From Malacoraja senta (taxonomy: Eukaryota): 64,000 nucleotides of DNA. Below, piece after piece: positions 3,501 to 63,915 of this stretch. Position 1 is the stretch's first letter. Each line of letters opens with the position of its first letter. The translations under genes were made by a program, and so were the position numbers. The notes below the pieces were generated by a model. The model was not told where the DNA came from. It was given only the letters and a program-made list of their open reading frames with translations, and did no database searches. The DNA is taken from positions 12,214,001 to 12,278,000 of the forward strand of contig CM075988.1 of the NCBI GenBank assembly GCA_038087875.1. The letters are read 5' to 3'.

Positions 3501-4447
3501 ACTTCACCAACATAGTCTGATTGTCAATTTGTTACTAAATCAAGGGCTCTCCTACTATTTAATAAATATACTAAATAAAGGCAAACCTGTCCACATAACC
3601 TGTGTTCATTCATGCAATATATTTGCTGATGTCCTATCTTCCAAGACACTCAAAATGTAATTTTAACATTTTGAACATCAAACACATTAACACTTACAGA
3701 AGGCACTTTTTGTTTCACTTCTACAAAGAAGGATTAAAAATTCATTTTGCTACATTTTGAATGGATTTTGAATGAATGTTTCATGCTCTTTCAAGAAAGT
3801 TTGCAGTTACAGTAATGTTTCTGAATTATTTCATTAATTATGGATTTGCCAGCTTGGATATTTGTAGCTTGTACCCATTGCATGATACATTTTTTTTTTT
3901 TATTTTCCAGATAAATTGTCTCTTAGATTTCAATTTGCCTATCTTTCTATTCTTTTGTTCAAAACATCAGCTAATACAGAAATTATTCTTCATTAGACAG
4001 TGCAAGTACATTTGTTTTAACAATCAAGCAATAAAAAAAAGCCCAAATAATGTGCATGTAATTTGGTAGGCTAGGATAAAATAAAATATTGTACATGTTT
4101 GTACATTGAAATGAAAACATTAAAATCTTGGAAAAAAGGTGAAGCAATATTTGTTTAAAATTAACATTTCAGATCAATCAAATTCATTAAAATGGTACTT
4201 ATATTCTCCTGTTAGCAACATTCCCGGTGGATTGTTTTGTTCATTGAAAATTATGAATAATTCATTTGCATTTCCAATTTTTTTAATTTGCTGTCATGTC
4301 CTTTAAGCAAATTTCTTCTTCCAACTCATCTCTCATACCTACATAACTACTTTGTTTACATTTAAGGCACTACTTTCAGATTTAACCACATCATTCTCAA
4401 ATTGTAAAATTGCAGTACCCTACGCTCTCCATTCTGAGGATAACTGA

Positions 4448-6210
4448 AGGGCCTGTCCCACTTAGGCAATTTTTCAGCGGGCTGCCGGCGAGTGTCAAGC
4501 TCGCGGCACTCGCTGAAAAACTGGGAAGTGGAACGGCGAGTGTCAAGAGTGGAACACACACACATCGCAAAGGCGGGGGCCAGGGAAAGTGGGGGAGCGC
4601 TAAGTCCTTTAAAGGGGGGGGGGAGAAGTGGGGGTGGGGGAGAAGTGGGGGTGGGGGGGTGGGGAGAAGGAGTGGAGACACTTTTAAGAAGCCAGATAAC
4701 TTTTAATAAGCCAGAGATGCACAGCTGTGAAGTTTGGCGGGCATTTAACATTATCGGTTGGTTTTCCTTGGTTCTGAAAACTCGTGCTTATGTTTTGTTC
4801 CCCAATGAGTCAATGAAAATGCCTGGTCAGCAAAGGAGATTAACTAAAACTACCTATAATAATAATAATAATGAATTTTATTTACGGGCGCCTTATACCG
4901 AGGTCTCAAGGACACCTTACAGAGATTTATAGGAAACATATAATCAGAATTTAAAAAATAAGTTATAAAGACCAATACACAAATCAGGGACAGAATTCCT
5001 TCCAAAAACACAAGAAATAAAAACAGAAGCACAATTTGAGGAGAGAGAAGCGGCAACGAAACCGCGCCAGCGTCCACTCTCCCCTCCGACCGCCATCTTG
5101 AACACAGACTAACAAATACAATTACAAACAATTACATACAAAAATCATCCCCCCACAGTGATTTCCACTGTGGGGGAAGGCACAATGTCCAGTCCCCAGC
5201 CCCAGTTCACCCCCAAAAAGTCAGGCCAAATGAGGCCCCCGCTGTTGCCTCTACGGAGGCCCGATGATCCTGGCCGTTCTCGCCGGGTGATGTAGCCCCG
5301 GCGTCGGGAGAGTCCTCCAGCAGCTGGGCCACCTGGAACGGCCGCATCCCTCACCGGAGACCGTAACTACGGCTGGAACGGCAGATTTCCCGCAGGCGTC
5401 CGCAGCACCTGAAGCCGACAAGGCCGCGCCGATTTGGAGCTCAAGGCTCCCGGTGTTGGAGTCGGCGCCGCCGCCCGCGGATGGTCGCTCCAGTCCCGCA
5501 GCCCGGAGGTGTTGTGCTCGGCGGTCCAGCTCACCGGAGCTCCAGCGCGTCGGTCCAGCGCGGCGACCCAGGCAAGGCATCGCCCGCTCCGCTGCACAAT
5601 AGCACTCCAGCGCCGTGCCGCCACCGAAGCTGAGGGTGCTGTGCGGCCCCCGCCAGGAAACACCGCTCCACGCCGCTCCACGCCCGCTGGTAGGCCGCGA
5701 GGACGGGTCGACTGGGCAACCGGAGAGAAGGCTGCCTCACCGACCAGGTAGGGACCAGGAAGTGATTTCTCCTTGATCCCCCCACATCAAAGGCAAATAA
5801 AGAAAAAACAGAGACTTAAAGAAAACTAAAAAAACTTGGAAAAAAAGTACAATTAACGGACGGCTGCTGTTTGGCAGCCGTTCCTCAAGATGGCTCTTGA
5901 CCTATGGCTACCTCAACTACCTACAACTACATGACGACCCCACAACCACTGCATCTATGATTATAAAGTATCAATTTTCTCCATGGCGACCATTTTTTGG
6001 TCGCAGAAAATTTTTCAACATGTTGAAAAATTTGCTGCGACCATACTGAGGCCACGACTAGTTCCCAGAATGCGGGAACTGCTCGCGACCATGAAGGAGA
6101 CTCATCAGAGACCACCAGCGAACATGTGACGACCCTGTGGCGAACATGTGGCGACCCTGTGGCGATCATGAGGCGAGCGCAGAGTCTCCTAAAAAGTCGC
6201 CTAAGGCCCT
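4448..6210 (+). mobile_element. PIF/Harbinger-type MITE family A, interrupted by a retroposon
   Basis: Left TIR AGGGCCTGTCCCACTTAGGC; right TIR CCTAA[deletion]GGCCCT followed by TAA. Collinear with the 60690-61491 copy except for the 4858-5899 insertion. Confidence 0.8.
4858..5899 (-). mobile_element. GC-rich non-autonomous retroposon (copy 1, L2-like tail)
   Basis: Minus-strand 3' end CTGTAAGGTGTCCTTGAG...AAGGCGCCCGTAAATAAAATTC(ATT)n; flanked by ACCTAT at 4852-4857 and 5900-5905; absent from the sister MITE copy. Confidence 0.75.
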
Positions 6211-6242
6211 TAAGTCTAACATTCCCAATTAGCCCCATCCAA

Positions 6243-6928
6243 CAGCGGACCTCACTATCAAAACATGGAGGGGACGGGACACAATTTTTTGGTGGCCACG
6301 CGCGCATGCGCACACACACACACGCGCGCGCGAGGCTTCGGAGGCTCAATCCAGCGCTAAATGCAGCTCAACTGCCTGTCTCACCGGGTTAACTACAGCC
6401 CTGGCTGGACTGACGGGATACCAGTGCTGCTTCTCCGCGCTGGCCATATTTCCCGCAAGTCCAGGAAGGGTTGTAAGCTCACCTGGCGGGACAGGCAGAG
6501 TTAGCTGGGTTTAGCGCTGTTTCTCTGCGCTGGCCCGTCTGACTGCCGACCAAAGATCCTATAGCGGAGGATCTTTGCTCCCGACCTCTCCGGCCACCCG
6601 CGGTGGGAGGGTGGGGGGGGCACTCGAATGGGGACGGGACAGCACCGGAGACCCGGCCGGGATGGATCCTGCCTGCGGATGAAGCGCAGGCCTGTGCCAC
6701 GTCTCCCTCCTCCAATCATCGCGCTGAATCATGTCCCGCCTCCATTGCCTGCTGACCGACGTCTCTCTCATCCAATCAGCGCCCTCGATCATCAGTCCCA
6801 CCCCCACTGTCTCGCAAAAAGCGGAGATTTTAAAATCAGGATCACAAAAACTTGGGGGGGATGTCCCCCACCTCCCAAAACATGGAGGGGACGTGTCCCC
6901 TCTGGCCCCCCCGGGTTTTCCGCCCCTG
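6243..6928 (+). mobile_element. Probable hAT-type MITE
   Basis: Right end TCCGCCCCTG, degenerate left end CAGCGGA. AAAACATGGAGGGGACG occurs near both ends. 8-bp flanks CCATCCAA/CCATCTAG match 6/8. Confidence 0.5.
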
Positions 6929-7284
6929 CCATCTAGCTGCACAACATTGAAGCAGGAATGGTCAGTTTTTTACAGGACATGGTATTCCTGTTGAGCTTCT
7001 GCTGTTGGAGTAACTTAAGTCACGCACTGTGATTAAGATCCAAAGACTTTATTAACATTACACCAAAGGTAACTTCATCTCAGCACGTAACTCCATGGGA
7101 GGGAGAAAGGGCAGAGAAGCTTTCTATTAAACAAGTGGGCGTAGCTACAAAGTATGACTGATAACATGACTGACACTGATCTATATCCTCCCAAAGAAAG
7201 GCTGAACTGGCAGCGAAACGTTGTAGTGTTTGTCTTAATGAATCGGTTTGTTAAAGATGCTGATCAGAGGTTGGTGGACAGTTT

Positions 7285-7690
7285 CAACTGTGGCAGCGAA
7301 TTCCACAGATTCACAACTCTCTGGATGAAAAACGTTTGCCTCATCTCAGTCCTAAAGAGCCTACCCCTTATTCTTAAACTCTGTCCCCTCGTTCTGGACT
7401 CCCCCAACATCGGGAACATTTTTCCTGCATCTAGCATGTCCAATCCCTTAAGAATTATATATGATTCTATAAGATCCCCTCTCATCCTAAATTCCAGTGA
7501 ATACAAGCCCAGTCAACCCATTCTATCCTCATATGTCAGTCCCACTATCCAGGAAATTAACCTGGTGAACCTACGCTGCACTCCCTCAATAGCTAGAATG
7601 TCCTTCCTCAAATTAGGAGATGAAAACTGAGCACAATACTCAAGGTGTGGTCTCACCAGGGCCCTGTACAACTGCAGTAGAACCTCTTAT
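7285..7690 (-). mobile_element. CR1/HER1-type LINE ORF2 C-terminal fragment
   Basis: ORF 7264..7506 YSLEFRMRGDLIESYIILKG...SRTRGQSL...FFIQRVVNLWNSLP is the typical CR1 ORF2 C-terminus. Confidence 0.9.
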
Positions 7691-8123
7691 AACCATTACA
7701 GCACGGAAACAGGCCATCTCGGCCCTTCACAGGCTGATGCACTTTCTTGATCATCGCATCAGTATGAAGGGATTAGGTTAGGTTGCTGATGATAAGGATG
7801 CTTAGATGTCTGAAGGCGTTAATCATCTCTTCAGCAGCACCGTTGATGAGGGACAAATAAAGGAATTGCATAAAGGTGTGGCATTAATTGTGATGAGACC
7901 TCTTTGGAATGATGTAGTCTAAATAGGTAGATGTGAAAATCAATTCAAGGTTAATTGGTCACAGAAATAAATGGTAATTTTCAGATACTAAAACCTTGTC
8001 TGCTAATTCCCCAGAGGTGAAACAAGCCCATTAAGGTTAAGAGGAAGAACCAGACAGTATTGACCTTGTTTTTATTTAGTTCCCATGTTGGGAAATGTGA
8101 TGTCACGAATATAACAGGCATCC

Positions 8124-8256
8124 TGTGTAGGAAGGAACTGCAGATGCTGGTTTAAACCGAAGATAGACACAAAAAGCTGGAGTATCTCAGCGGGACAGGC
8201 AGCGTCACTGGAGAGAAGGAATGGGTGGCGTTTCGGGTCGAGACCCTCCTTCAGAT
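8124..8256 (-). mobile_element. Penelope-like pLTR fragment
   Basis: Near-identical to the terminal segment joined to the PLE ORF remnant at 46271-46935. Confidence 0.8.
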
Positions 8257-9096
8257 TCAATCGACGCCTATTGGCCACAAGAGTCTCATGTGCAATTATT
8301 TTATTTTTTTTGCTGGTGATCTTTCTTGATATTAAATTCCTTTCTGTAAATTACTCAAAAATGGGAAGATTCTGGATGCTCGGCCATACATCTTTCTCTT
8401 GTTATGACAAGTAGTGAGCAAGTCTGATATGGCAACGACAACTTTTACCATCAAATCCAATGTAACTCAGACCTCCAGTGAATTGCTTCTTGCACTTTCT
8501 CCATTGTTTGAAGTGAATTTTCAACCCATTGCCTTGAGAAATAATTCATGTTGCAAAGCAAACCTCTTTCTTCTGCTCACTGTTGAATCCAGAATGATGT
8601 TGTATCAGGCTCGGCAAGCTGTAAAATGAAGGAAGATAACAACAGAATATAGGCTGCTGATCAACACTGTGGTGGCAATTGCTTTAGTGCTATGGAGACC
8701 AATTTCATTCCAAAATAGCCACAAAGATTTGATGCCTCCCACTTGCACTCAATGCCACACATGTATTCATTAACATGAAGGGCCCATCAACCAAGCTATT
8801 TGCAGTGAGCATCATCCACATGAAGTTTGGCTGCTCGTAGATTTTCAGTCATTTTGACTTGAATAATTGCTTGGTTTGTTTGCAAATTATTTAATTGTTT
8901 CTGAAGTCTTTGAAAGAATATGTGTCAGTTGCTCAGGGGATTTGTCCTGCCATCAAGACAGGTAGCGCTCACAATTGGATTCTGAAAAGAAAAAAAATAA
9001 TAGCAGATGCAAGCAATCTTAAATAAAAACAGGAAATGAAGGGAATATTCAGCAGGTCCAGGCAGCATCTCTGGACAGAAGAATGGAGTTCATGTT

Positions 9097-9420
9097 TTAG
9101 TTTAGTTTAGTTTAGAGATACAGCGTGGAAACAGGCCCACCGAGTCCGCCCCGACCAGCGATCTCCGCATATTAAAACTATCCTATGCACACTACGGACA
9201 ATTGACATTTATGCAAAGCCAATCAACCTACAAACCTGTACGTCTTTGGAGTGTGTGAAGAACCGAAGATCTCGGAGAAAACCAACGTGATCATGGGGAG
9301 AACGTTGGTAGTCGGGATCTGTAGTCGGGATCATAGTCGGGATCGTAGAACTGTAGTCGGGATCGAACCTGGGACTTTTGCGCTGAAAGCAACTGTACCG
9401 CTGTGCCATCGTGCTGCCAC
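9097..9420 (-). mobile_element. HE1-like V-SINE with internal tandem amplification
   Basis: (TTTAG)n tail, GGAAACAGGCCC, B-box GGTTCGATCC on the minus strand; four copies of TAGTCGGGATC at about 9309-9364. Confidence 0.8.
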
Positions 9421-9686
9421 TGTTGACAACCATCAACATTTGCTCAGGGAGAAAACAAGTGGGTCTCAATTTGTGGAGGGAGTTAGGGGTAGAGAAAACA
9501 AAAGGGAGGAATGTCTGTGGTGGACATGGAGATGGTCTGGGTAATAGAATCATTTTTGGTGGTATCTGACAGAGGGATATTTCTGAAGATCAGTGATGCT
9601 GAGATGACAAACACAGCAGTTGCCAGAAATCTTAAATAAAAGCGAATACTGGAAATAATTAACCAATTGCATAGCATAATCGAGTT

Positions 9687-10555
9687 ATACAATACAATAC
9701 AATACAATATGGTTTTATTCGTCACATTGCACATAAAGTGCAAGTGAAATGAATTTGCCAGCAGCGGTACAATGAAAAAGAACACACAATAAAAATTTAA
9801 CACAAACATCCACCACAGCATTCATCACTGTGGTGGAAGGCACAAAATTTGGCCAGTCCTCCTCCATTTTCCCCCGTGGTCGGGACCTCAACCCTCCGCA
9901 GCCGTCGCTGCGGGCATCCAGATGAGTGAAAGTCCAGGTAAGTCCTGAAAAATGGTGCCTCCCCCACCGGAGACCGCGGCTTCAGGTTGGTGTAGGCCGC
10001 AGGCCGGCGGTCGAAGTTTTAAAGTTCCCGCCGCGCCGCAGCAAGAAGCACCGCAGACCGCAGGGCCGGCGGTCGAAGCTCCCCTCCAGGGGTGATGGTA
10101 AGTCCACGCCGGGCCCGCGGTAGAAGTAGGCCGCGGGCCGGCAGTGGTATCTTCTTCTTCTCCCGGGTCCCCCACGCGGGATCCCTGGGCTGCGGACGCC
10201 GCGCCAGCTGGAGCTCCGCAGACCGCGACTTCAGGCTGCCGCGGGCCAGCGAAACGGAGCGCTCCCCTCCGGCGAGCCCCAGCGAGGACTCGCCCGCTCC
10301 ACGCCGAGAGTCCACGCTGCGCCCGCGGCTGAAGCCCCGGGCGCGTCTCCGGGAAAGGCCATCCGATCCTCGATGTTAGGCCAATGGGGAGCCGACCTGG
10401 AAAATGTCGCCTCTCCGTGGAGGAGGCGACCGAAGCGGTTTCCCCCTTACCCCCCCCACACCACCCCCACACAAGACACACAAAGAAACATTAAAAACAG
10501 ACTTTAAAACATACTAAAAAAATTTAAAAAGCAGAAAAAAACGGACACGCTGCTG
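9687..10555 (-). mobile_element. GC-rich non-autonomous retroposon (copy 2, Rex1-like tail)
   Basis: Minus-strand tail TTCATTTCACTTGCACTTTATGTGCAATGTGACGAATAAA+(TTGTA)n resembles the Rex1 tail at 35208-35259; shares internal hairpins with copy 1. Confidence 0.75.
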
Positions 10556-10567
10556 ACCACATGGTTA

Positions 10568-10705
10568 GACCACATGGAAACAGCCCCTTCGGCCCAACTT
10601 GCACATGCCGACTAAGATGCTCCAACTGCACTTGTCCCAACTGCCTGAGTTTGGCTTATATCCTAAACCTTTCTGATCCATTTACCTGTCCAGATATCGT
10701 TTAAA
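10568..10705 (-). mobile_element. CR1/HER1-type LINE extreme 3' tail
   Basis: CATGGAAACAGCCCCTTCGGCCCAACTTG...GGCTTATATCC matches the reverse complement of the LINE tail at 53160-53300. Confidence 0.7.
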
Positions 10706-24202: not shown

Positions 24203-25745
24203 TGAATGAATGAATGAATGAATGAATGAATGAATGAATAAGTTTATTGGCCAAGTATTCACATACAAGGAATTTGCCTTGGTGCTCCGCCCACAAGTGA
24301 CAACATGACATACAGTGACAGTTGAGAATGATGCATAAAACATTAAACATTAATAATAAAACATTATTGATTAAACATGTAAATTAAATAAAATACCAGA
24401 GCAAAAGGTGGCTACAGATTTTTGGTAATTGAGTAAAGCTACTACTCGTGGAAAAAAAGCTGTTTTTATGTCTGGCTGTGGCAGCTTTGACAGTCCGGAG
24501 TCGCCTTCCAGAGGGAAGTGATTCAAAGAGTTTGTGGCCAGGGTGCGAAGGGTCAGAGATGATCTTACCCACTCGCTTATTGGCCCTTGCAGTGTACAGT
24601 TCGCCAATGGAGGGAAGGTTGCAGCCAATAACCTTCTCAGCTGATCGGACGATTCGCTGCAGCCTCCGGGTGTCGTGCTTCGTGGAGCCAAAACAGACCA
24701 TGATGGAGAAGGTGAAGACAAACTCTACGTTGGCCGTATAGAATTGGACCATCATTGCCTGTGGCAGATTGTGCTTCCTCAGCTGCCTTAAGAAGTACAT
24801 CCTCTGTTGTGCCTTTTTGACTGTGGAGTCGATGGTAGCCCCCCACGTAAGGTCCTTGGAGATGATGGTTCCCAGGAACTTAAAAGACTCCACAGATGTG
24901 ACTGTGGAGTTGTTGATGGTGAGTGGGGTGAGGGGAGGGGGAGCTCTCCTAAAGTCTACAATCAATTCCACTGTCTTAAGAGCATTGAGCTCCAGGTTGT
25001 TGCGACGGCACTAGGACGCCAGCTGTGACACTTCCTGTCTGTGGGCAGATTCTTCCCCATCCTGGATCAGTCCAATCAGGGTTGTGTCATCCACAAACTT
25101 GAGAAGCTTGACAGAGGAGTCTGTGGAGGTGCAGTCGTTGGTGTAGAGAGAGTAGAGAGTGGAGAGTACACAGCCTTGCGGTGCTCCTATGCTGAGGGTT
25201 TGCCGGTCCAGTATGTGCTTTCCCAGTCTCACATGCTGCCTCCTGTCTGTCAGGAAGCTGGTGATCCACCGACAGAGGGGTTCAGGTACAGTCAACTCAG
25301 AAAGCATGGATTGTAGTTGCTCTGGCACAATGGTGTTGAATGCAGAGCTAAATTCAACAAACAAAATCCTCGCATAGGTCCCCTGGTGCTGGAGGATGAA
25401 GTGCAGGCCTAGGTTGACTGCGTCCTCCTAAGATCTATTGGCCCGATATGCATACTGCAGAGAGACCAGCAGGGGGATCGTGATATTTTTCAGCTTGGCC
25501 AGCACAAGCCTTTCAAGGGTCTTCATGATTACAGAGGTCAGTGCGACAAGCCTGTAGTCATTAAGACCAGTAATCCTTGCCTTTTTGGGTACATGGACAA
25601 AGTGGAGACTTTGAAGCAGGCAGGGACAGTACATGTTTGCAGGGACTGGTTGAAAATGTCTGTGCCAGTTGTTCGCACAGAGCTTGAGAGTAGAGGGGGG
25701 AAACATTGTCCGGTCCTGGAGATTTCCGGCTTTTCTGTCTTATTA
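24203..25745 (-). mobile_element. Rex1/Babar non-LTR retrotransposon, 5'-truncated RT region
   Basis: ORFs with LNDYRLVALTSVIMK, QYAYRANRS, FSSAFNTI, GAPQGCVLS, KFVDDTT, ELIVDFRR, LPSGRR; 3' (ATTC)n tail at 24203-24239. Confidence 0.93.
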
Positions 25746-26664: not shown

Positions 26665-27134
26665 GTGGTCTGGTTTGGCTCAGCCGCCAAGCATGACATC
26701 CAGAGGCTGCGGCGCATCATTTGATCAGCCGAGAAGGTTGTTGGCTGCAACCTTCCCCCCATCGACAAACTGTACACTGCAAGGGCCAGGAAGCAAGCGG
26801 GTAAGATCATCTCTGACCCCTCTCACCCTGGCCACAAACACTTTGAAGCACTTCCCTCTTTAAGGCGACTCCGGACTGTCAAAGCCGCCACAGCCAGACA
26901 TAAAAACAGCTTTTTTCCATGAGCAGTAGCTCTACTCAACAACCAAAAGTCTGTAGCCTCCTTTTGCTCTGGTATTTTATTTCATTCTTCACATGTCTAC
27001 ATAATAATGTTTTATTTGTAATTGTCTACTGTATACCGTGTTGTTACTTGCGAGCATAGCACCAAGGCAAATTCCTTGTGTGTATACATACTTGGCTAAT
27101 AAAATTAATTCAATTCAATTCAATTCAATTCAAT
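26665..27134 (+). mobile_element. Rex1 3' fragment
   Basis: High similarity to the reverse complement of 24240-24700; (AATTC)n tail. A second, very short Rex1 tail follows at about 27241-27311. Confidence 0.9.
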
Positions 27135-28416
27135 TGCCCTTCACGAGCTTGTTGACGTTTCTTCGACAAATATATTGGTATATGTTTATTGTTGTTCCGC
27201 TTAGTGAGATACAGTGAAAAACGTTGCTTTGCGTTCTATCCAGGCAAATCTTGTATGTATACGTATTTGGCTAATAACATTTATTCAATTCAATTATTCA
27301 ATTCAATTCAATTACATATTTATACCCAGGGGAATTAAGTAGTTATTTTGTAACTGCATTCATGGAGGAAGATGCACAACATTTTCCAGATATATTAGAC
27401 AATGAAAGTTCTAATGAGAATGACAAACTTAAGAAATTATGCATTTTTCTAACACAGTTCAAAAAAAATTAGTAATCTTAAAAACGGATAAATTCCAAGA
27501 AAGTGGTGGTATGTGATAGTGTACATGACCACATCTTGATCGCTGCATGATTTTAAAATCTTCTACCAACAGAGGAAAGAAAACCTTCTCAATGCTGCTG
27601 AGTGGTTGATATTTCTGAATTAAAGTCTGCTCTAGGTTGCCTCTTCACACGTGAGTGTGTGCTGCAGACATTTTATATATATATATATAGCACTGTTAGT
27701 CATTATAATTATTATTCCAACACTATATTTATCATGTCTCTGACATGAGTCCTTGGCTTACAAAATAGTTTCATTTGCTGCAAAAAATATTTTGCAACAT
27801 TTCATGGGAGAATGATGTGGAGGAAGGATCAGGGAATGTAACATGGAGCTTATTTTTAAATTGGCGTTGTGTCTAATTCCTTGTTCATCTCTAGTGCAGT
27901 TAATTGGATGATAAAAAAACAATACCATTGTTTTATTTTCCCAAAATAGACTTCATTTTTAAAATAGCATTTGCACTAAAATTTTATGTGCAGTTGTCCG
28001 TCAGTACTGTCTGTGAGAAATGAGTCATGGATTAAAAATAAAGGATTTAAGAAGAATTCTTCATTTTTGTGTTGTATTTCTTTGAACAGCCTTTTCCTTC
28101 AAATCACTCTCAGATTAATACAGTTTCTACAATTGTACATCAGAATATTGTTGGAACAATTGTTTTGGCATTTGTCTTCGACATTATGCAAAGGCAATTC
28201 AGTGAAGCTGTATAAAATTAGATTTGGCCTTACCCTGTCAGGATGCGACTATGTAAACCTGTAGTCGATAAACCTGATGATCGAAGATATTTTGTTCCCA
28301 CTCTGCATTCAAGGCTTCTGACACGACTGAGGAAACCAGTGTGGGAAGAACTATTGTTTCTTCTCAGATGGGGCAGAAGGTGCGTATTGGGGTGGATGGC
28401 TTGTGAGGAGGTGCAT

Positions 28417-34874: not shown

Positions 34875-35259
34875 ATTTAACAAGATTATGGGAGACCCCT
34901 TCCACTCCAGCAACGGACTGTTCCAGCTGCTACGGTCAGGCAAACGCCTCCGTTGCCATGCTGAGAGAACGGAGAGGATGAGAAGGAGTTTCTTCCCAGA
35001 GGCCATTAGGACTGTAAACTCCTATCTCTCCAGGGACTAACTTTACTGGACCATTCTACTGTTGTGTGGTGTCTTTTAAAAATTGCTGGGTTTTTTCTCC
35101 TTTTTCTTCCCACCCACAAATATGTAATATGTGAATATGTGATTCTGTTCCATTCTGTTTGTAGGTTGTTTGTTTGTTTTTTTGCACAATCCGCGAGCAT
35201 TGCCACTTTTCATTTCACTGCACATCTCGTATGTGTATGTGACGAATAAACTTGACTTG
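34875..35259 (+). mobile_element. Rex1 3' fragment (second subfamily)
   Basis: ORF NKIMGDPFHSSNGLFQLLRSGKRLR...RMRRSFFPEAIRTVN; tail GTGACGAATAAA(CTTGA)n. Confidence 0.88.
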
Positions 35260-35734
35260 ACGATTACATAGTCAGAGGCGTGTTTGAGCCTGGGATTCTC
35301 ACGCAATCGTGCTAGTAGTTATTAGTTTTAGTTGGAGGAAGCATGGGGGAGAAGGCACAGCATTGGACCATGCATGAGTTCCACCATGCACGAGTTTGAC
35401 TACGAGTAAGATCAAAATGTACTTAAACAAGAAGAAGTTTGGATGAATATCTTACTGTTTTTACCACAACAATAAAGAGACTATTAATCAAGAGTATGTT
35501 TTGAAGATGTATCTTTGGACGACTTTAAATGTCTTGTGGAGAGCTCTCAAACATATCAAAATTATCTCCTCACCCCTGTCTTCAATCATAGTGGCTAGAG
35601 GAAAGATTCCTTGAACGATATAATAATCTGCCATGACACTATGTTTAAAATCTCAACAGTGTAGCGAGAGAAAGAAATGGATGGCCATTGCAGATGGAGG
35701 CCACACGTTTCCCAAAATGGTCGCCTGGTCTGTG

Positions 35735-54221: not shown

Positions 54222-55061
54222 CGGTGGCGCTGTTGCTAGTTGCCTCCACCTTCAGTCCGGTATCTTTTTGTTTTTTTGTTATGTTTGAAGAACGTTTTTT
54301 GTGGGGGGTTTTGTCTTTATGTGGGGGGAAGAGGGTACGGTAAGGGGGATACCGTCCTTCAGTCGCTTCCTGGAGAGGACGCGACTATTTTTCGAGTCGC
54401 GTCCTCGCCCACCCCCCCCCCCCCCCCCCCGCGGCCTACCTAATGGATTGGTGCGGCCTTTCCTGCCGGGAACGACCAGAGCTCCAGCAGCAGCGGCGCA
54501 GTGCTGGATACATCGCGGGGCGGGCGATGCCTTACCGGGGATCGCCGTTTGGAGCTCCGGAGTGTTGGGCCTGCTGCACCGACATCGCGGAGCTGTGATT
54601 CGCGGAGCTCCCAACGCGGGCGGCGCTGACCAACATCGCGGAGTCCTGCGACTCCGCCCGGCTCGGCCTGTGGACTTCGGGAGCCGCAGACTCTGGTGGG
54701 AGGTGGCTGATTTGGAGGTCCGGGCCGCTGAGGATGTTCTCCGTCGGGGTTCGGCGTCGGGGTTCCATCATTCCTGGCGTGAGGGCCTGAGCATCGGGCC
54801 GCCCGTGGCGGCGACTACGGGTGCTCGGGAGGCCCCGACCACGGGTGAACATCTGGGAAGATCGCCGGGGAGGCTGGCTGGACTATGGTACCTTCCTTAA
54901 CTTTGGTGACGCTGTGGGGTTGTGTTGTGTCGTGGACTTCTGTGTTTGCGCTTTTTTATTTATTTATTTATTTATTATTTATTTTTATGATACGTGACTG
55001 TAAGGAAAATCCATTTTGTTGTCTCTTATGAGATAATGACAATAAATTGAATACAATACAA
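54222..55061 (+). mobile_element. GC-rich non-autonomous retroposon (copy 3, Rex1-like tail)
   Basis: Same layout as copies 1 and 2: T-rich leader, GGTAAGGGGGA.ACCG motif, hairpin, CpG-rich body, ATGACAATAAA+(AATAC)n tail. Confidence 0.7.
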
Positions 55062-55749: not shown

Positions 55750-56010
55750 GGTTGGTTTGAAGTAAAAATGCACTGCTAATGGTTGTTTGGGTTGAAGTAA
55801 AAATGCACTGCTAATGGTTGTTTGGGTTGAAGTAAAACTGCACTGCTAATGGTTGTTTGGGTTGAAGTACAAATGCACTGCTAATGGTTGTTTGGGTTGA
55901 AGTACAAATGCACTGCTAATAGTTGTTTGGGTTGAAGTAAAAATGCACTGCAAATAGTTGTTTGGGCGGGTTTTGGGTTGAAGTGAAAAGGCACTGCAAA
56001 GGGTTGTTTG
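55750..56010. repeat. 35-bp minisatellite, about 7 copies
   Basis: Unit GGTTGTTTGGGTTGAAGTAAAAATGCACTGCTAAT at 55781, 55816, 55851 and onward. Confidence 0.95.
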
Positions 56011-56387: not shown

Positions 56388-56740
56388 TCACCTTGCTTGA
56401 AATGGTATGAAACTGCATTTGAATGTGGTGGCCTTGCACCCTGCATGAAATGGTATGAAACTGCATTTGAATGTGGTGTCGTTGCACCCTGCATGAAATG
56501 GTATGAAACTGTATTTGAATTTGGTGGCCTTGCACCCTCGTTGAATGGTATGAAACTGCACTTGAATTTGGTGGCCTTGCACCCTGCTTGAAGTGGTTGG
56601 AAACTGCACTTGAATTCGGTGGCCTTGCACCCTGCTTGAAGTGGTAGGAAACTGAACTTGAATTTGGTGGCCTTGCACCCTGCTTGAAATGGTAGGAAAA
56701 TGGATTTGAATTTGGTGGCCTTGCACTCTGCTTGAAATGG
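56388..56740. repeat. 48-bp minisatellite, about 7 copies
   Basis: Unit GAAATGGTATGAAACTGCATTTGAATGTGGTGGCCTTGCACCCTGCAT with a 48-nt period. Confidence 0.95.
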
Positions 56741-60602: not shown

Positions 60603-60689
60603 TGATCAAACATTTACCGAACTGGGAGTTTCTCTCACATTCATAAAGGGCCATTCAAACTGACAAGGGGTCCAAGTTTAATTGTGTAT

Positions 60690-60795
60690 TGGGCCTGTCC
60701 CACCTAGGCGATTTTTCAGCGGACTGCCGACGAGTGTCAAGTTCGCAGCACTCGCCTGAAAAACTGGGAACTGGAACGGCGACTGTCAGAGTGGA

Positions 60796-60878
<83 letters not shown>

Positions 60879-61491
60879 TCGCAAAGGCGGGGGCCAGGGC
60901 AAACGGGGGAGCGCTGTCTGAAATCACACGGTGCAAAGCCAAGGTGATACAGACACACACCGCGATGAACAGGAAGGTTGGAGCTGTAATTAAGACGGCT
61001 TGCACAGTGTACGGTAAGTCCTTTAAAGAAGGGTGGAGAAGGGGGGAGAAGGAGTGGAGACAACTTTTAAGAAGCCAGACAACTTTTAATAAGCCAGAGA
61101 TACACAGCTGTGAAGTTCGGCGGACATTTAACATTACCGGTAGGTTATCCTTGGTTCTGAAAACTCGTGCCTGTGTTTTTTTCCCCAATGAGCCAATGAA
61201 AATGACCAGTCAGCTTCAGCAAAGGCGACTTTTAGTTAAAAACTACCTACGACTACCTCGACTACCTACAGCTACAGGGTGACCCCACTACAACTGCACC
61301 TACAACGACAAAGTATCGATTTTCTCCATGGTGACCATACTGAGGCCACGACTAGTTGCCAGAATGTGGGAACTCCTCGCGACCATGAAGGAGACTCACC
61401 AGAGACCACCAGCGAACATGTGGCGACCATATGTGGTGAGCGGAGAGTCTCCTGCACTCGCCTAAAAAGTCACCTAAGTGGGACAGGCCCA
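60690..61491 (+). mobile_element. PIF/Harbinger-type MITE family A with expanded (CA)n
   Basis: TIRs TGGGCCTGTCCCAC / GTGGGACAGGCCCA; flanks TAT/TAA; CA tract at about 60796-60873. Confidence 0.9.
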
Positions 61492-63120: not shown

Positions 63121-63256
63121 CTAATCGACTTTAAAGATACCTTCACATTTTCCTTACAACATTGAAGGATGAAATTCAGCCAATTGAATCTCTGACAATT
63201 CTCAGAGCAATCAAATTCCACCACTAATTTTCCTCGTAACCCATTCGTAATACACG

Positions 63257-63673
63257 TTGGAATTCAGAAGACTGAGGGGGGATCTCATAGAAACTTTCAA
63301 AATTCTTAAGGGGTTGGACAGGCTAGATGCAGGAAGATTATTCCCGATGTTGGGGAAGTCCAGAACTAGGGGTCACAGTTTAAGGATAAGAGGGAAGACT
63401 TTTAGGACCGAGATGAGGAAATCATTTTTTACACAGATAGTGGTGAATCTGTGGAATTCTCTGCCACAGAAGGTAGTTGAGGCCAGTTCATTGGCTATAT
63501 TTAAGAGGGAGTTAGACGTGGCCCTTGTGGCTAAAGGGATCAGGGGGTATGGAGAGAAGGCAGGGATGGGATACTGAGTTGGATGATCAGCCTTGATCAT
63601 ATCAAATGGCGGTGCAGGCTCGAAGGGCCGAATGGCCTACTCCTGCACCTATTTTCTATGTTTCTATGTTTCT
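63257..63673 (+). mobile_element. Young CR1/HER1-type LINE 3' end
   Basis: Uninterrupted ORF EFRRLRGDLIETFKILKG...RTRGHSL...LWNSLPQ...GIRGYG*; (TTTCTATG)n tail. Confidence 0.93.
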
Positions 63674-63915
63674 ATTATCTCACATTTCCATTATTTCCTC
63701 CCGGATTCCAGAACTCACAGACACACTGGGCAGAGTTTATCTGCAACCTACAAGTCTCTGTTGTGTGGGAGTAAACGAGAACACCCAGAAGAAAGTGACG
63801 TGGCACCAGGAGAACGTAAAAACTCCACTCAGACAAAAGTGGTCAGGATTGAACCCAGGTCGCTGGATCTGTGAGGCTGTAGCTCTACCTCTCGCCAAAT
63901 TTCTCATGAATATAT

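What the first reader, a model, noticed from the sequence alone, without database searches (positions are those of the whole stretch)
4858..10555. GC-rich non-coding retroposon family with a shared body but different LINE-type tails
Seen: three elements of 0.84-1.04 kb (4858-5899 minus, 9687-10555 minus, 54222-55061 plus) share one layout: short GC start, T-rich leader, G-run, hairpin module, CpG-rich body, then a GGACT..TG(T)GCCTTCC-like motif. None has a tRNA A/B box or credible ORF. Copy 1 ends CTGTAAGGTGTCCTTGAG..AAGGCGCCCGTAAATAAA(ATT)n, which I recall as an L2-type tail. Copies 2 and 3 end like the Rex1 tails in this window; TTCATTTCACT..GTGACGAATAAA is shared between copy 2 and 35208-35250. 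Inference: a SINE-like, possibly Pol II-driven parasite that has switched helper LINE by tail exchange. I cannot match it to a described family, and it is the best candidate here for an undescribed system.
Basis: partly seen in the sequence, partly recalled or inferred. Interest (0 to 1): 0.75.

Follow-up and report, generated by a model that had tools for sequence, protein, structure and literature searches.

The report
Abundant non-coding LINE-dependent retroposon family
Three 0.85-1.0 kb GC-rich repeats in this skate-like genome are real members of a very abundant, non-coding jumping-element family that borrows the tail of a Rex1-type LINE to copy itself; it is an unusual variant of a known kind of genomic parasite, not a new class.

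Summary
The three elements (4858-5899 minus, 9687-10555 minus, 54222-55061 plus) are true homologues, about 61% identical (z 16-23 against shuffles). They have no tRNA head, B box, conserved reading frame or Pfam domain.

Main new result: a paralogous empty site at 61245-61250 shows that copy 1, unusual tail included, is one 1042-bp insertion flanked by a 5-6 bp target-site duplication. It is not two adjacent insertions at this locus.

Tails:
- Copy 2's last 77 nt match the 3' UTR end of a Rex1-like LINE fragment in the window (z 8.4).
- Copy 3's tail matches another Rex1-like 3' end (0 of 500 shuffles).
- Copy 1's tail matches neither. Calling it "L2-type" could not be tested.

Several T-runs near each 5' end and one AATAAA 20-25 nt from each 3' end argue against Pol III and fit Pol II; this is inferred. 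Contigs from this species and two relatives show the family is very abundant.

The scan has met this family before on other DNA of this genome (s1-213380 and several first-reader notes), with a similar verdict: a variant of a known kind.

The parts
4858..5899 (-). Copy 1: complete single insertion of 1042 bp (GC-rich body plus divergent 3' module)
   Evidence: Boundaries fixed by the paralogous empty site.
5900..5905 (.). Target-site duplication of copy 1, upstream copy, ACCTA(T) on the + strand
   Evidence: right junction against the empty site.
4852..4857 (.). Target-site duplication of copy 1, downstream copy, ACCTA(T) on the + strand
   Evidence: left junction against the empty site.
61245..61250 (.). 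Paralogous empty site: a second copy of the host repeat runs uninterrupted through ACCTAC
   Evidence: Flanks 4500-4857 and 5900-6140 align at 82-95% to a contiguous stretch at about 60740-61430.
5886..5894 (-). GCCATCTTG at nt 6-14 of copy 1. It looks like a YY1 site by recollection; not tested.
5715..5736 (-). 5' hairpin with U-rich loop, copy 1. Equivalent hairpins at 10389-10415 (copy 2) and 54372-54409 (copy 3).
   Evidence: 89.7% of cells paired, 3 pairs changed on both sides, register-specific.
5571..5590 (-). Most conserved core motif GGAGCGGGCGATGCCTTGCC (copy 3: 54517-54536; copy 2: 10282-10300, diverged)
5150..5184 (-). TGTGCCTTCC motif plus 11-12 bp 3' hairpin, copy 1 (copy 2: 9809-9844)
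   Evidence: one C-G to A-U compensatory pair between copies 1 and 2.
4858..5100 (-). Copy-1-specific 3' module (about 243 nt). It starts at CAAGATGGCGG and ends with a hairpin, AATAAA (4877-4882) and (ATT)n. It replaces the last 90 nt or so of the Rex1-type end seen in copy 2.
   Evidence: Homology with copy 2 stops at ..GTGTTC, about 5101.
9687..10555 (-). Copy 2 (869 bp). It starts about 30 nt further in than copy 1 and has a Rex1-type tail ending in (ATTGT)n.
9687..9763 (-). Copy 2 tail homologous to the Rex1-like 3' UTR end at 35153-35262
   Evidence: score 24, z 8.4, 84-column alignment..
54222..55061 (+). Copy 3 (840 bp), with a Rex1-type tail ending in (ATACA)n-like repeats and a C19 run at 54412-54430
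34882..35262 (+). 5'-truncated Rex1-like LINE: ORF C-terminus plus 3' UTR. Candidate partner lineage of copy 2.
24203..25697 (-). 5'-truncated Rex1-like LINE (RVT_1 plus ALKBH8_N, 3' UTR, (TTCA)n tail)
26665..27135 (+). Rex1-like LINE 3' fragment with (AATTC)n tail. Closest in-window match to copy 3's tail.

Best explanation
These are members of a very abundant family of non-coding, non-autonomous retroposons of about 0.85-1.0 kb. They encode nothing.

Proposed mechanism: their RNA is probably made by RNA polymerase II from the element's own CpG-rich 5' part (inferred). It ends just after a single AATAAA. It carries a 3' end (terminal hairpin, AATAAA, short tandem repeat) copied from the 3' UTR of Rex1-like LINEs. 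The LINE's reverse transcriptase recognises that shared tail and inserts the RNA by target-primed reverse transcription (inferred from the SINE/LINE 'stringent' model, PMC3747384).

Different subfamilies carry the tails of different LINE lineages. The copy-1 subfamily has had the last 90 nt or so of the Rex1-type end replaced by a different 243-nt module, and that composite moved as one unit.

Shown: homology, non-coding nature, tail sharing for copies 2 and 3, single-event insertion with TSD for copy 1, high abundance.

Inferred: polymerase, trans-mobilisation, and the identity of copy 1's helper.
For: - Homology among copies: z 16-23; conserved order of modules.
- Non-coding: no conserved frame, no Pfam domain, no tRNA or B box, no Rfam family.
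- Tail sharing: copy 2 against the Rex1-like 3' UTR end at 35153-35262, z 8.4. Copy 3 against the Rex1-like end at 27026-27135, 0 of 500 local shuffles. The LINE is a real RT element (RVT_1).
- Single insertion event for copy 1: empty site and ACCTA(T) TSD.
- Against Pol III: 4-5 runs of T4-T7 in the first 100 nt and one AATAAA 20-25 nt from each 3' end.
- Abundance: summed contig depth 2.6e5-1e6 over the elements against 26-50 over single-copy stretches, in the source species and two relatives.
- Body bins of copy 1 are within about 2-fold of its 3' bins. Most laid sequence is therefore body plus tail, not tail alone.
- 5' hairpin kept through 3 two-sided changes.
Against: - No RNA data: no RNA run holds the stretch and X20 is probably DNA. 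Transcription and its polymerase are therefore inferred.
- No TSD could be found for copies 2 and 3.
- Only three copies were available as sequence. 5' ends differ by up to about 30 nt, so a fixed start is not shown.
- The tool itself warns that depth from contigs is not a copy number.
- The Rex1 clade assignment of the LINE rests on domain content, tail architecture and recollection, not on a tree.
- Copy 1's helper is unknown.
Confidence: 0.7

Rival explanations
1. Origin rival. The elements are internally deleted autonomous Rex1-type LINEs, made of LINE 5' UTR plus 3' UTR like MAR4 and RTESINE1 for RTE. The 'body' would then simply be the helper's own 5' UTR and promoter. Mobilisation would be the same; only the origin and the novelty change.
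For: - The whole 3' 200 nt or so is laid out like the Rex1-like 3' UTRs in the window.
- CpG-rich, promoter-like 5' parts are typical of vertebrate LINE 5' UTRs (general knowledge).
- Elements built from a LINE 5' end plus its tail are listed in PMC3747384 Table 1.
Against: - Not tested. All Rex1-like copies in the window are 5'-truncated (they start at aa 454 or later of P0015), and full-length DNA could not be fetched.
- No similarity between the elements and 150 Rex1-like proteins.
- The body is not part of the Rex1-like 3' UTRs in the window.
Confidence: 0.3
2. Copy 1 is a one-off chimera. It would have arisen by reverse-transcriptase template switching from a short tail-bearing RNA onto a GC-rich element RNA, or by retroposition of a nested master read only once. 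It would not be a subfamily that changed helper.
For: - One TSD pair around a two-part element is what template-switch chimeras give (general knowledge).
- The second part begins with its own CAAGATGGCGG start-like motif.
- No second copy of the junction exists in the window.
Against: - The terminal bin 4800-4996 still has a summed depth of 1.6e5 in the source species, so that tail sequence is itself highly repeated.
- Unchecked notes from other windows of this genome report GC-rich bodies with an 'L2-type' tail (s1-141001, s1-179770, s1-207030). These are leads only.
Confidence: 0.25
3. Copy 1's tail is not L2-type. It is a further, diverged Rex1-type tail, with an internal insertion of about 150 nt, so no change of LINE clade took place.
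For: - The last 143 nt of copy 1 align collinearly with copy 3's Rex1-type tail up to a shared CTGTAAGG (score 27, 0 of 500 local shuffles, z 3.4).
- The very end (AATAAA, AATTC-like, trinucleotide repeat) has the same form as the Rex1-like ends at 24203 and 27135.
- The Rfam UnaL2 3' element gives no hit.
Against: - The match to copy 3 is mostly T-rich low-complexity sequence and only just beats the best shuffle (27 against 26).
- There is no significant match to any of the three Rex1-like tails themselves.
- The paired ..GTAAGGTGTCC.. and ..AAGGCGCC.. boxes resemble, by recollection only, tails seen on fish L2 elements.
Confidence: 0.35
4. The similarity is a by-product of GC-rich composition, or the elements are protein-coding genes or pseudogenes.
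For: Long ORFs of 139-203 aa occur in all three copies.
Against: - z 16-23 against dinucleotide shuffles, and the GC-rich control does not align.
- The frames of the ORFs are not conserved and there are no Pfam hits.
- Copy 1 has insertion hallmarks.
Confidence: 0.02

Closest known systems
MAR4 / RTESINE1 (marsupial non-autonomous elements built from the 5' end and 3' tail of RTE LINEs; PMC3747384 Table 1)
   Same: No tRNA, 5S or 7SL head. LINE-type 3' tail shared with the helper. Non-coding. Mobilised in trans.
   Different: The helper here is Rex1-like, not RTE. Homology of the 5' part to the helper's 5' end is untested. The body is long, CpG-rich and carries conserved hairpins.
CORE-SINEs, V-SINEs and DeuSINEs (SINE superfamilies with a conserved core and different LINE-derived tails; PMC3747384 Table 1)
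   Same: One shared body carried with the tails of different LINE lineages. 'Stringent' tail recognition. Ancient, diverged subfamilies.
   Different: Those have Pol III (tRNA or 5S) heads and are 200-500 bp. These have no Pol III head, carry T-runs that would stop Pol III, and are 0.85-1.0 kb.
SVA and its gibbon relatives LAVA/PVA/FVA (hominoid composite Pol II retroposons; from my own knowledge)
   Same: Non-coding, GC/CpG-rich and of composite build. Presumably Pol II transcripts ending at an AATAAA. Mobilised in trans by a LINE. Relatives differ by exchanged 3' modules.
   Different: No sequence relation. The helper there is L1, acting through poly(A) ('relaxed'). Here the 3' end is a LINE-specific hairpin plus microsatellite. 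There is no Alu-like or SINE-R part.
SINE2-5_NV / Rex1-24_NV of Nematostella (the only Rex1-partnered SINE in PMC3747384 Table 1)
   Same: Non-autonomous element using a Rex1-clade tail.
   Different: That one has a tRNA head and comes from a cnidarian. This one is a vertebrate element without a Pol III head.
The same family as reported earlier in this scan (s1-213380, another window of this genome)
   Same: 0.8-kb non-coding LINE-dependent repeats, very abundant, two internal hairpins with compensating changes, no tRNA head. Verdict: variant of a known kind.
   Different: That report calls the tails L2-type. Here two of three tails match Rex1-like LINE ends in the window and only copy 1 has the other type. 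New here: the empty-site proof that body plus alternative tail inserted as one unit.

Membership tests
Classical SINE (Pol III retroposon) | Internal Pol III promoter: tRNA-, 5S- or 7SL-derived head with A and B boxes | tested here: not met
   No tRNA-like gene. No B-box match inside any copy. No Rfam tRNA, 5S or 7SL hit.
Classical SINE (Pol III retroposon) | Transcript can be made by Pol III: no internal T4+ terminators, length usually under 600 nt | tested here: not met
   4-5 runs of T4-T7 in the first 100 nt of each copy. Lengths are 840-1042 nt.
LINE-dependent non-autonomous retroposon, 'stringent' type | 3' end homologous to the 3' UTR end of an autonomous LINE in the same genome | tested here: met
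   Copy 2 against 35153-35262, z 8.4. Copy 3 against 27026-27135, 0 of 500 shuffles. Not met for copy 1.
LINE-dependent non-autonomous retroposon, 'stringent' type | No coding capacity of its own | tested here: met
LINE-dependent non-autonomous retroposon, 'stringent' type | Insertion hallmarks: target-site duplication and a defined empty site | tested here: met
   Copy 1: ACCTA(T) TSD and paralogous empty site. None found for copies 2 and 3.
LINE-dependent non-autonomous retroposon, 'stringent' type | Dispersed, high copy number | tested here: met
   summed contig depth is 1e4-fold above single-copy stretches in three species. Only the order of magnitude is claimed, because contig depth is a poor measure.
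LINE-dependent non-autonomous retroposon, 'stringent' type | Mobilised in trans by the partner LINE's proteins | not testable with these tools
   Needs a retrotransposition assay.
Rex1/Babar clade (the partner LINE) | RT-encoding non-LTR element with a conserved 3' UTR followed by oligonucleotide repeats of variable sequence (PMC6274825) | tested here: met
   RVT_1. Three 3' ends carry (TTCA)n, (AATTC)n and CTTGA repeats.
Rex1/Babar clade (the partner LINE) | Groups with Rex1/Babar in an RT phylogeny | not tested
   The best relatives are unnamed teleost proteins at 57-64% identity. No reference set was at hand.
L2-type tail (copy 1) | Homology of the last 60-100 nt to the 3' end of an autonomous L2 LINE | not testable with these tools
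   No L2 in the window. The Rfam UnaL2 3' element gives no hit, but that model is eel-specific.
LINE deletion derivative (5' UTR plus 3' UTR, MAR4-like) | 5' part homologous to the 5' UTR of the partner LINE | not testable with these tools

The most novel reading that the evidence does not exclude
A structured, Pol II-transcribed non-coding retroposon lineage of skates keeps its own promoter-bearing body and two RNA hairpins while swapping 3' modules. This lets it parasitise LINEs of different clades (Rex1 and L2). The L2-tailed composite then expanded mainly in this species: the terminal bin is about 20% of the depth of the neighbouring body-side bin here, against 1-3% in two relatives. It would be a SINE-like parasite without any Pol III ancestry, a fish counterpart of the SVA/LAVA type of element but using sequence-specific tail recognition.
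Probability: 0.3. Interest if true: 0.5.

Novelty: new variant of a known kind. Interest (0 to 1): 0.35.

Why it matters
If the family is as abundant as the contig data suggest, it makes up a visible share of a skate genome, yet it fits no textbook SINE definition. Repeat annotators will tend to label it 'Unknown' or lump it with Rex1 LINEs.

It offers a natural test of two questions:
- How stringent, tail-recognising LINEs are parasitised by Pol II transcripts.
- Whether a parasite can change helper by exchanging its 3' module.

It does not open a new category. Shared cores with different LINE tails, and LINE-end chimeras, are established.

Tried and rejected
1. Fetching full-length Rex1 DNA to test whether the body is a LINE 5' UTR. 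P0015 itself shows no endonuclease domain.
2. tblastn of all 150 Rex1-like proteins against the three elements: only noise, E above 0.005.
3. Coding potential: tblastx between copies shows shifting frames on both strands. Rejected.
4. Rfam at permissive thresholds over both regions: only sub-threshold miRNA noise. No ribozyme, rRNA, tRNA or UnaL2 element.
5. Idea that copy 1's 3' module is a duplicate of the family's T-rich 5' leader, suggested by repeats D1, D3 and I2: not significant, z 0.5-1.7. Rejected.
6. TSDs for copies 2 and 3: none convincing.
7. Presence or absence of copy 2 in related species. Contigs of organisms B and C stop matching at 9693 with about 38 further unlike letters (records 21 and 30). 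The matching joint, if any, was not among the rows shown. Unresolved.
8. RNA evidence: no RNA run holds the stretch, and X20 is probably DNA.
9. Literature searches for a described Rex1-partnered vertebrate SINE-like family, and for tail motifs as text: nothing relevant.
Its length window could not have shown body-ORF fusions anyway.


Full report
**What is there.**
- Each element has a short GC-rich start and a T-rich leader of about 60-90 nt.
- A G-run and a hairpin with a U-rich loop follow.
- Next comes a 550-650 nt body of 65-69% G+C with CpG observed/expected 0.87-0.96, against 0.42 for the window.
- The most conserved core is GGAGCGGGCGATGCCTTGCC.
- After the body comes GGACT..TGTGCCTTCC, directly followed by an 11-12 bp hairpin, a T/G-rich stretch, and a tail with one AATAAA and a short tandem repeat.

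The resemblance is not a composition effect. Local alignment scores are 37-48 against 13 +/- 1.6 for dinucleotide shuffles (z 16-23). A neighbouring GC-rich stretch scores like the shuffles. A profile built from the three finds no further copy in the window.

**Non-coding, not Pol III.** ARAGORN finds no tRNA-like sequence, and no B box lies inside any copy. Rfam gives nothing at gathering or permissive thresholds.

The 139-203 aa ORFs expected in such GC-rich DNA are in different frames in the three copies and hit no Pfam family.

Each copy has four or five runs of T4-T7 within its first 100 nt. Each has exactly one AATAAA, 20-25 nt from its 3' end. By established knowledge, T-runs terminate Pol III, so a full-length Pol III transcript is unlikely. 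A Pol II transcript ending at the AATAAA is the natural reading. This is inference: no RNA run holds the stretch, and the one candidate run is probably DNA.

**Copy 1 is one insertion.** Copy 1 sits inside another repeat that has a second, uninterrupted copy in the window. Flank 4500-4857 and flank 5900-6140 align at 82-95% to a contiguous stretch around 60740-61430.

At the empty site the sequence reads ..AAAACTACCTACGACTACC.. (61245-61250). At the filled site ACCTA(T) occurs on both sides (4852-4857 and 5900-5905).

So the GC-rich body and the unusual 3' module arrived together, with a 5-6 bp target-site duplication. It does not tell whether the composite was formed once (template-switch chimera) or is a propagating subfamily.

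**The tails.** The window holds three 5'-truncated copies of one LINE type. All three match the same protein family, and the longest, at 24203-25697, carries RVT_1 plus ALKBH8_N. Their closest relatives are unnamed teleost proteins at 57-64% identity. Their 3' UTRs end in (TTCA)n, (AATTC)n and CTTGA repeats.

A conserved 3' UTR followed by oligonucleotide repeats of variable sequence is how Rex1 is described (PMC6274825). I did not build a tree, so 'Rex1-like' is a working name.

- Copy 2: the last 77 nt align to the end of the 34882-35262 fragment with z 8.4, including TTCATTTCACT..GTGACGAATAAA.
- Copy 3: the tail matches the 27026-27135 end (0 of 500 local shuffles) and, more weakly, the 24203 end and copy 2.
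- Copy 1: it shares sequence with copy 2 up to ..GTGTTC (about 5101). It then carries a 243-nt module beginning CAAGATGGCGG. That module has its own 10-bp hairpin, a T-rich stretch, a terminal hairpin, AATAAA and (ATT)n.

Copy 1's module matches none of the Rex1-like or CR1 ends, and nothing else in the window carries it. Its only similarity is a weak, largely low-complexity collinear match to copy 3's tail ending in a shared CTGTAAGG (score 27 against a best shuffle of 26).

Whether it is 'L2-type' cannot be decided here. There is no L2 in the window. The LINE end at 63251-63680 is CR1-like, with (TTTCTATG)n. The Rfam UnaL2 element gives no hit.

**Structure.** The 5' hairpin keeps its position and U-rich loop in all three copies while the stem changes. 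89.7% of cells are paired against 32-44% when the partner is slid, and three pairs changed on both sides; 26 of 500 shuffles reach this.

The 3' hairpin is perfect in copies 1 and 2, with one C-G to A-U exchange, but half decayed in copy 3. With three sequences the count is not significant (167 of 500). These agree with the hairpin notes of this scan (s1-141503, s1-213380) but add little statistical weight.

**Abundance and relatives.** Contigs of the source species (X1, which has perfect matches over single-copy parts) and of two relatives were laid on 4800-10700. The relatives are about 4-5% diverged in the single-copy parts.

Single-copy stretches have a depth of 26-50. The elements have summed depths of 2.6e5-1e6. 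The tool warns that contig depth is no copy number, so I claim only 'very abundant in several species'.

Along copy 1 the body bins stay within about 2-fold of the 3' bins. The body is therefore not a rare LINE 5' end attached to a common tail. Copy 2 declines about 4-fold toward its 5' end.

The terminal bin 4800-4996 holds the end of copy 1's special module plus 58 nt of flank. Its depth is about 20% of that of the neighbouring bin (4997-5193) in the source species, but only 3% and 1% in the two relatives. This hints that this tail expanded mainly in this lineage; the evidence is weak.

**What could not be done.** The key open question is whether the body is the 5' UTR of an autonomous LINE. 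Answering it needs a full-length element. All in-window copies start at or after residue 454 of the longest relative. No Dfam or Repbase library is available here.

**Comparison with known kinds.** Table 1 of PMC3747384 lists two relevant groups. One is SINE superfamilies with one core and different LINE tails (CORE-, V- and Deu-SINEs). The other is elements whose 'promoter' is the 5' end of the helper LINE (MAR4, RTESINE1). Its only Rex1-partnered SINE is a tRNA-headed one from Nematostella.

The family here works like these through tail sharing and trans-mobilisation. It fails the defining test of a classical SINE, the Pol III head. Functionally it also resembles SVA-type composite Pol II retroposons (my own knowledge), but with a sequence-specific LINE tail.

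An earlier follow-up in this scan on another window of the same genome (s1-213380) reached the same overall verdict. It called the genome skate-like.

**Verdict.**
- It is a new variant of a known kind, already met by this scan.
- The new piece of evidence here is the empty-site proof that the body and its alternative tail transposed as one unit.

Noticed in passing
window 4362-4857 + 5900-6400 and 60650-61450: The repeat that hosts copy 1 has a second copy 55 kb away (82-95% identical), with G-rich 17-mers and an (AC)n run. I did not determine whether it is a transposon or a local duplication. It served as the empty-site reference.
   Followed up: partly
window 7164-7754, 7952-8345, 9134-9330: These stretches have the highest summed contig depths of the region (1e6-1.7e7) in all four runs. 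Opposite-strand joints at 8124-8162 suggest a fold-back. A perfect B box (GGTTCGATCCC) lies at 9359-9369 on the minus strand, next to a 12-bp tandem repeat (9308-9348). Together these are probably tRNA-type SINEs.
   Followed up: no
window 9687-9693: Contigs of two related species match the single-copy flank up to 9693 and then run on for about 38 letters unlike copy 2. Either copy 2 is absent at the orthologous site there or its repeat tail differs. The tool output did not let me decide.
   Followed up: partly
window 63251-63680: 3' end of a CR1-like LINE: ORF C-terminus, a GC-rich hairpin region and a (TTTCTATG)n tail. It is unrelated to the tails of the three elements.
   Followed up: partly
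window 54412-54430: A run of 19 C in copy 3, where copies 1 and 2 have ordinary sequence. It may be polymerase slippage or an assembly-prone homopolymer.
   Followed up: no
window 55752-55966 and 56389-56740: Two clean minisatellites: a 35-bp unit x6 at 96% and a 48-bp unit x7.4 at 90%. The second lies inside long artefactual ORFs.
   Followed up: no
window 9967-10334 (copy 2 body), 54578-54643 (copy 3), 5516-5559 (copy 1): The CpG-rich bodies contain short internal direct repeats. Copy 2 has an exact 15-mer twice, 62 nt apart, and 26-32 nt repeats 78-249 nt apart. This may explain the variable body length and the poor alignment of the middle part.
   Followed up: partly
window 24387-25010 (minus): The Rex1-like LINE ORF carries a Pfam ALKBH8_N match (E 1e-14) just after the RT. 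The same domain appears in its teleost relatives, one of which UniRef names by this domain.
   Followed up: no
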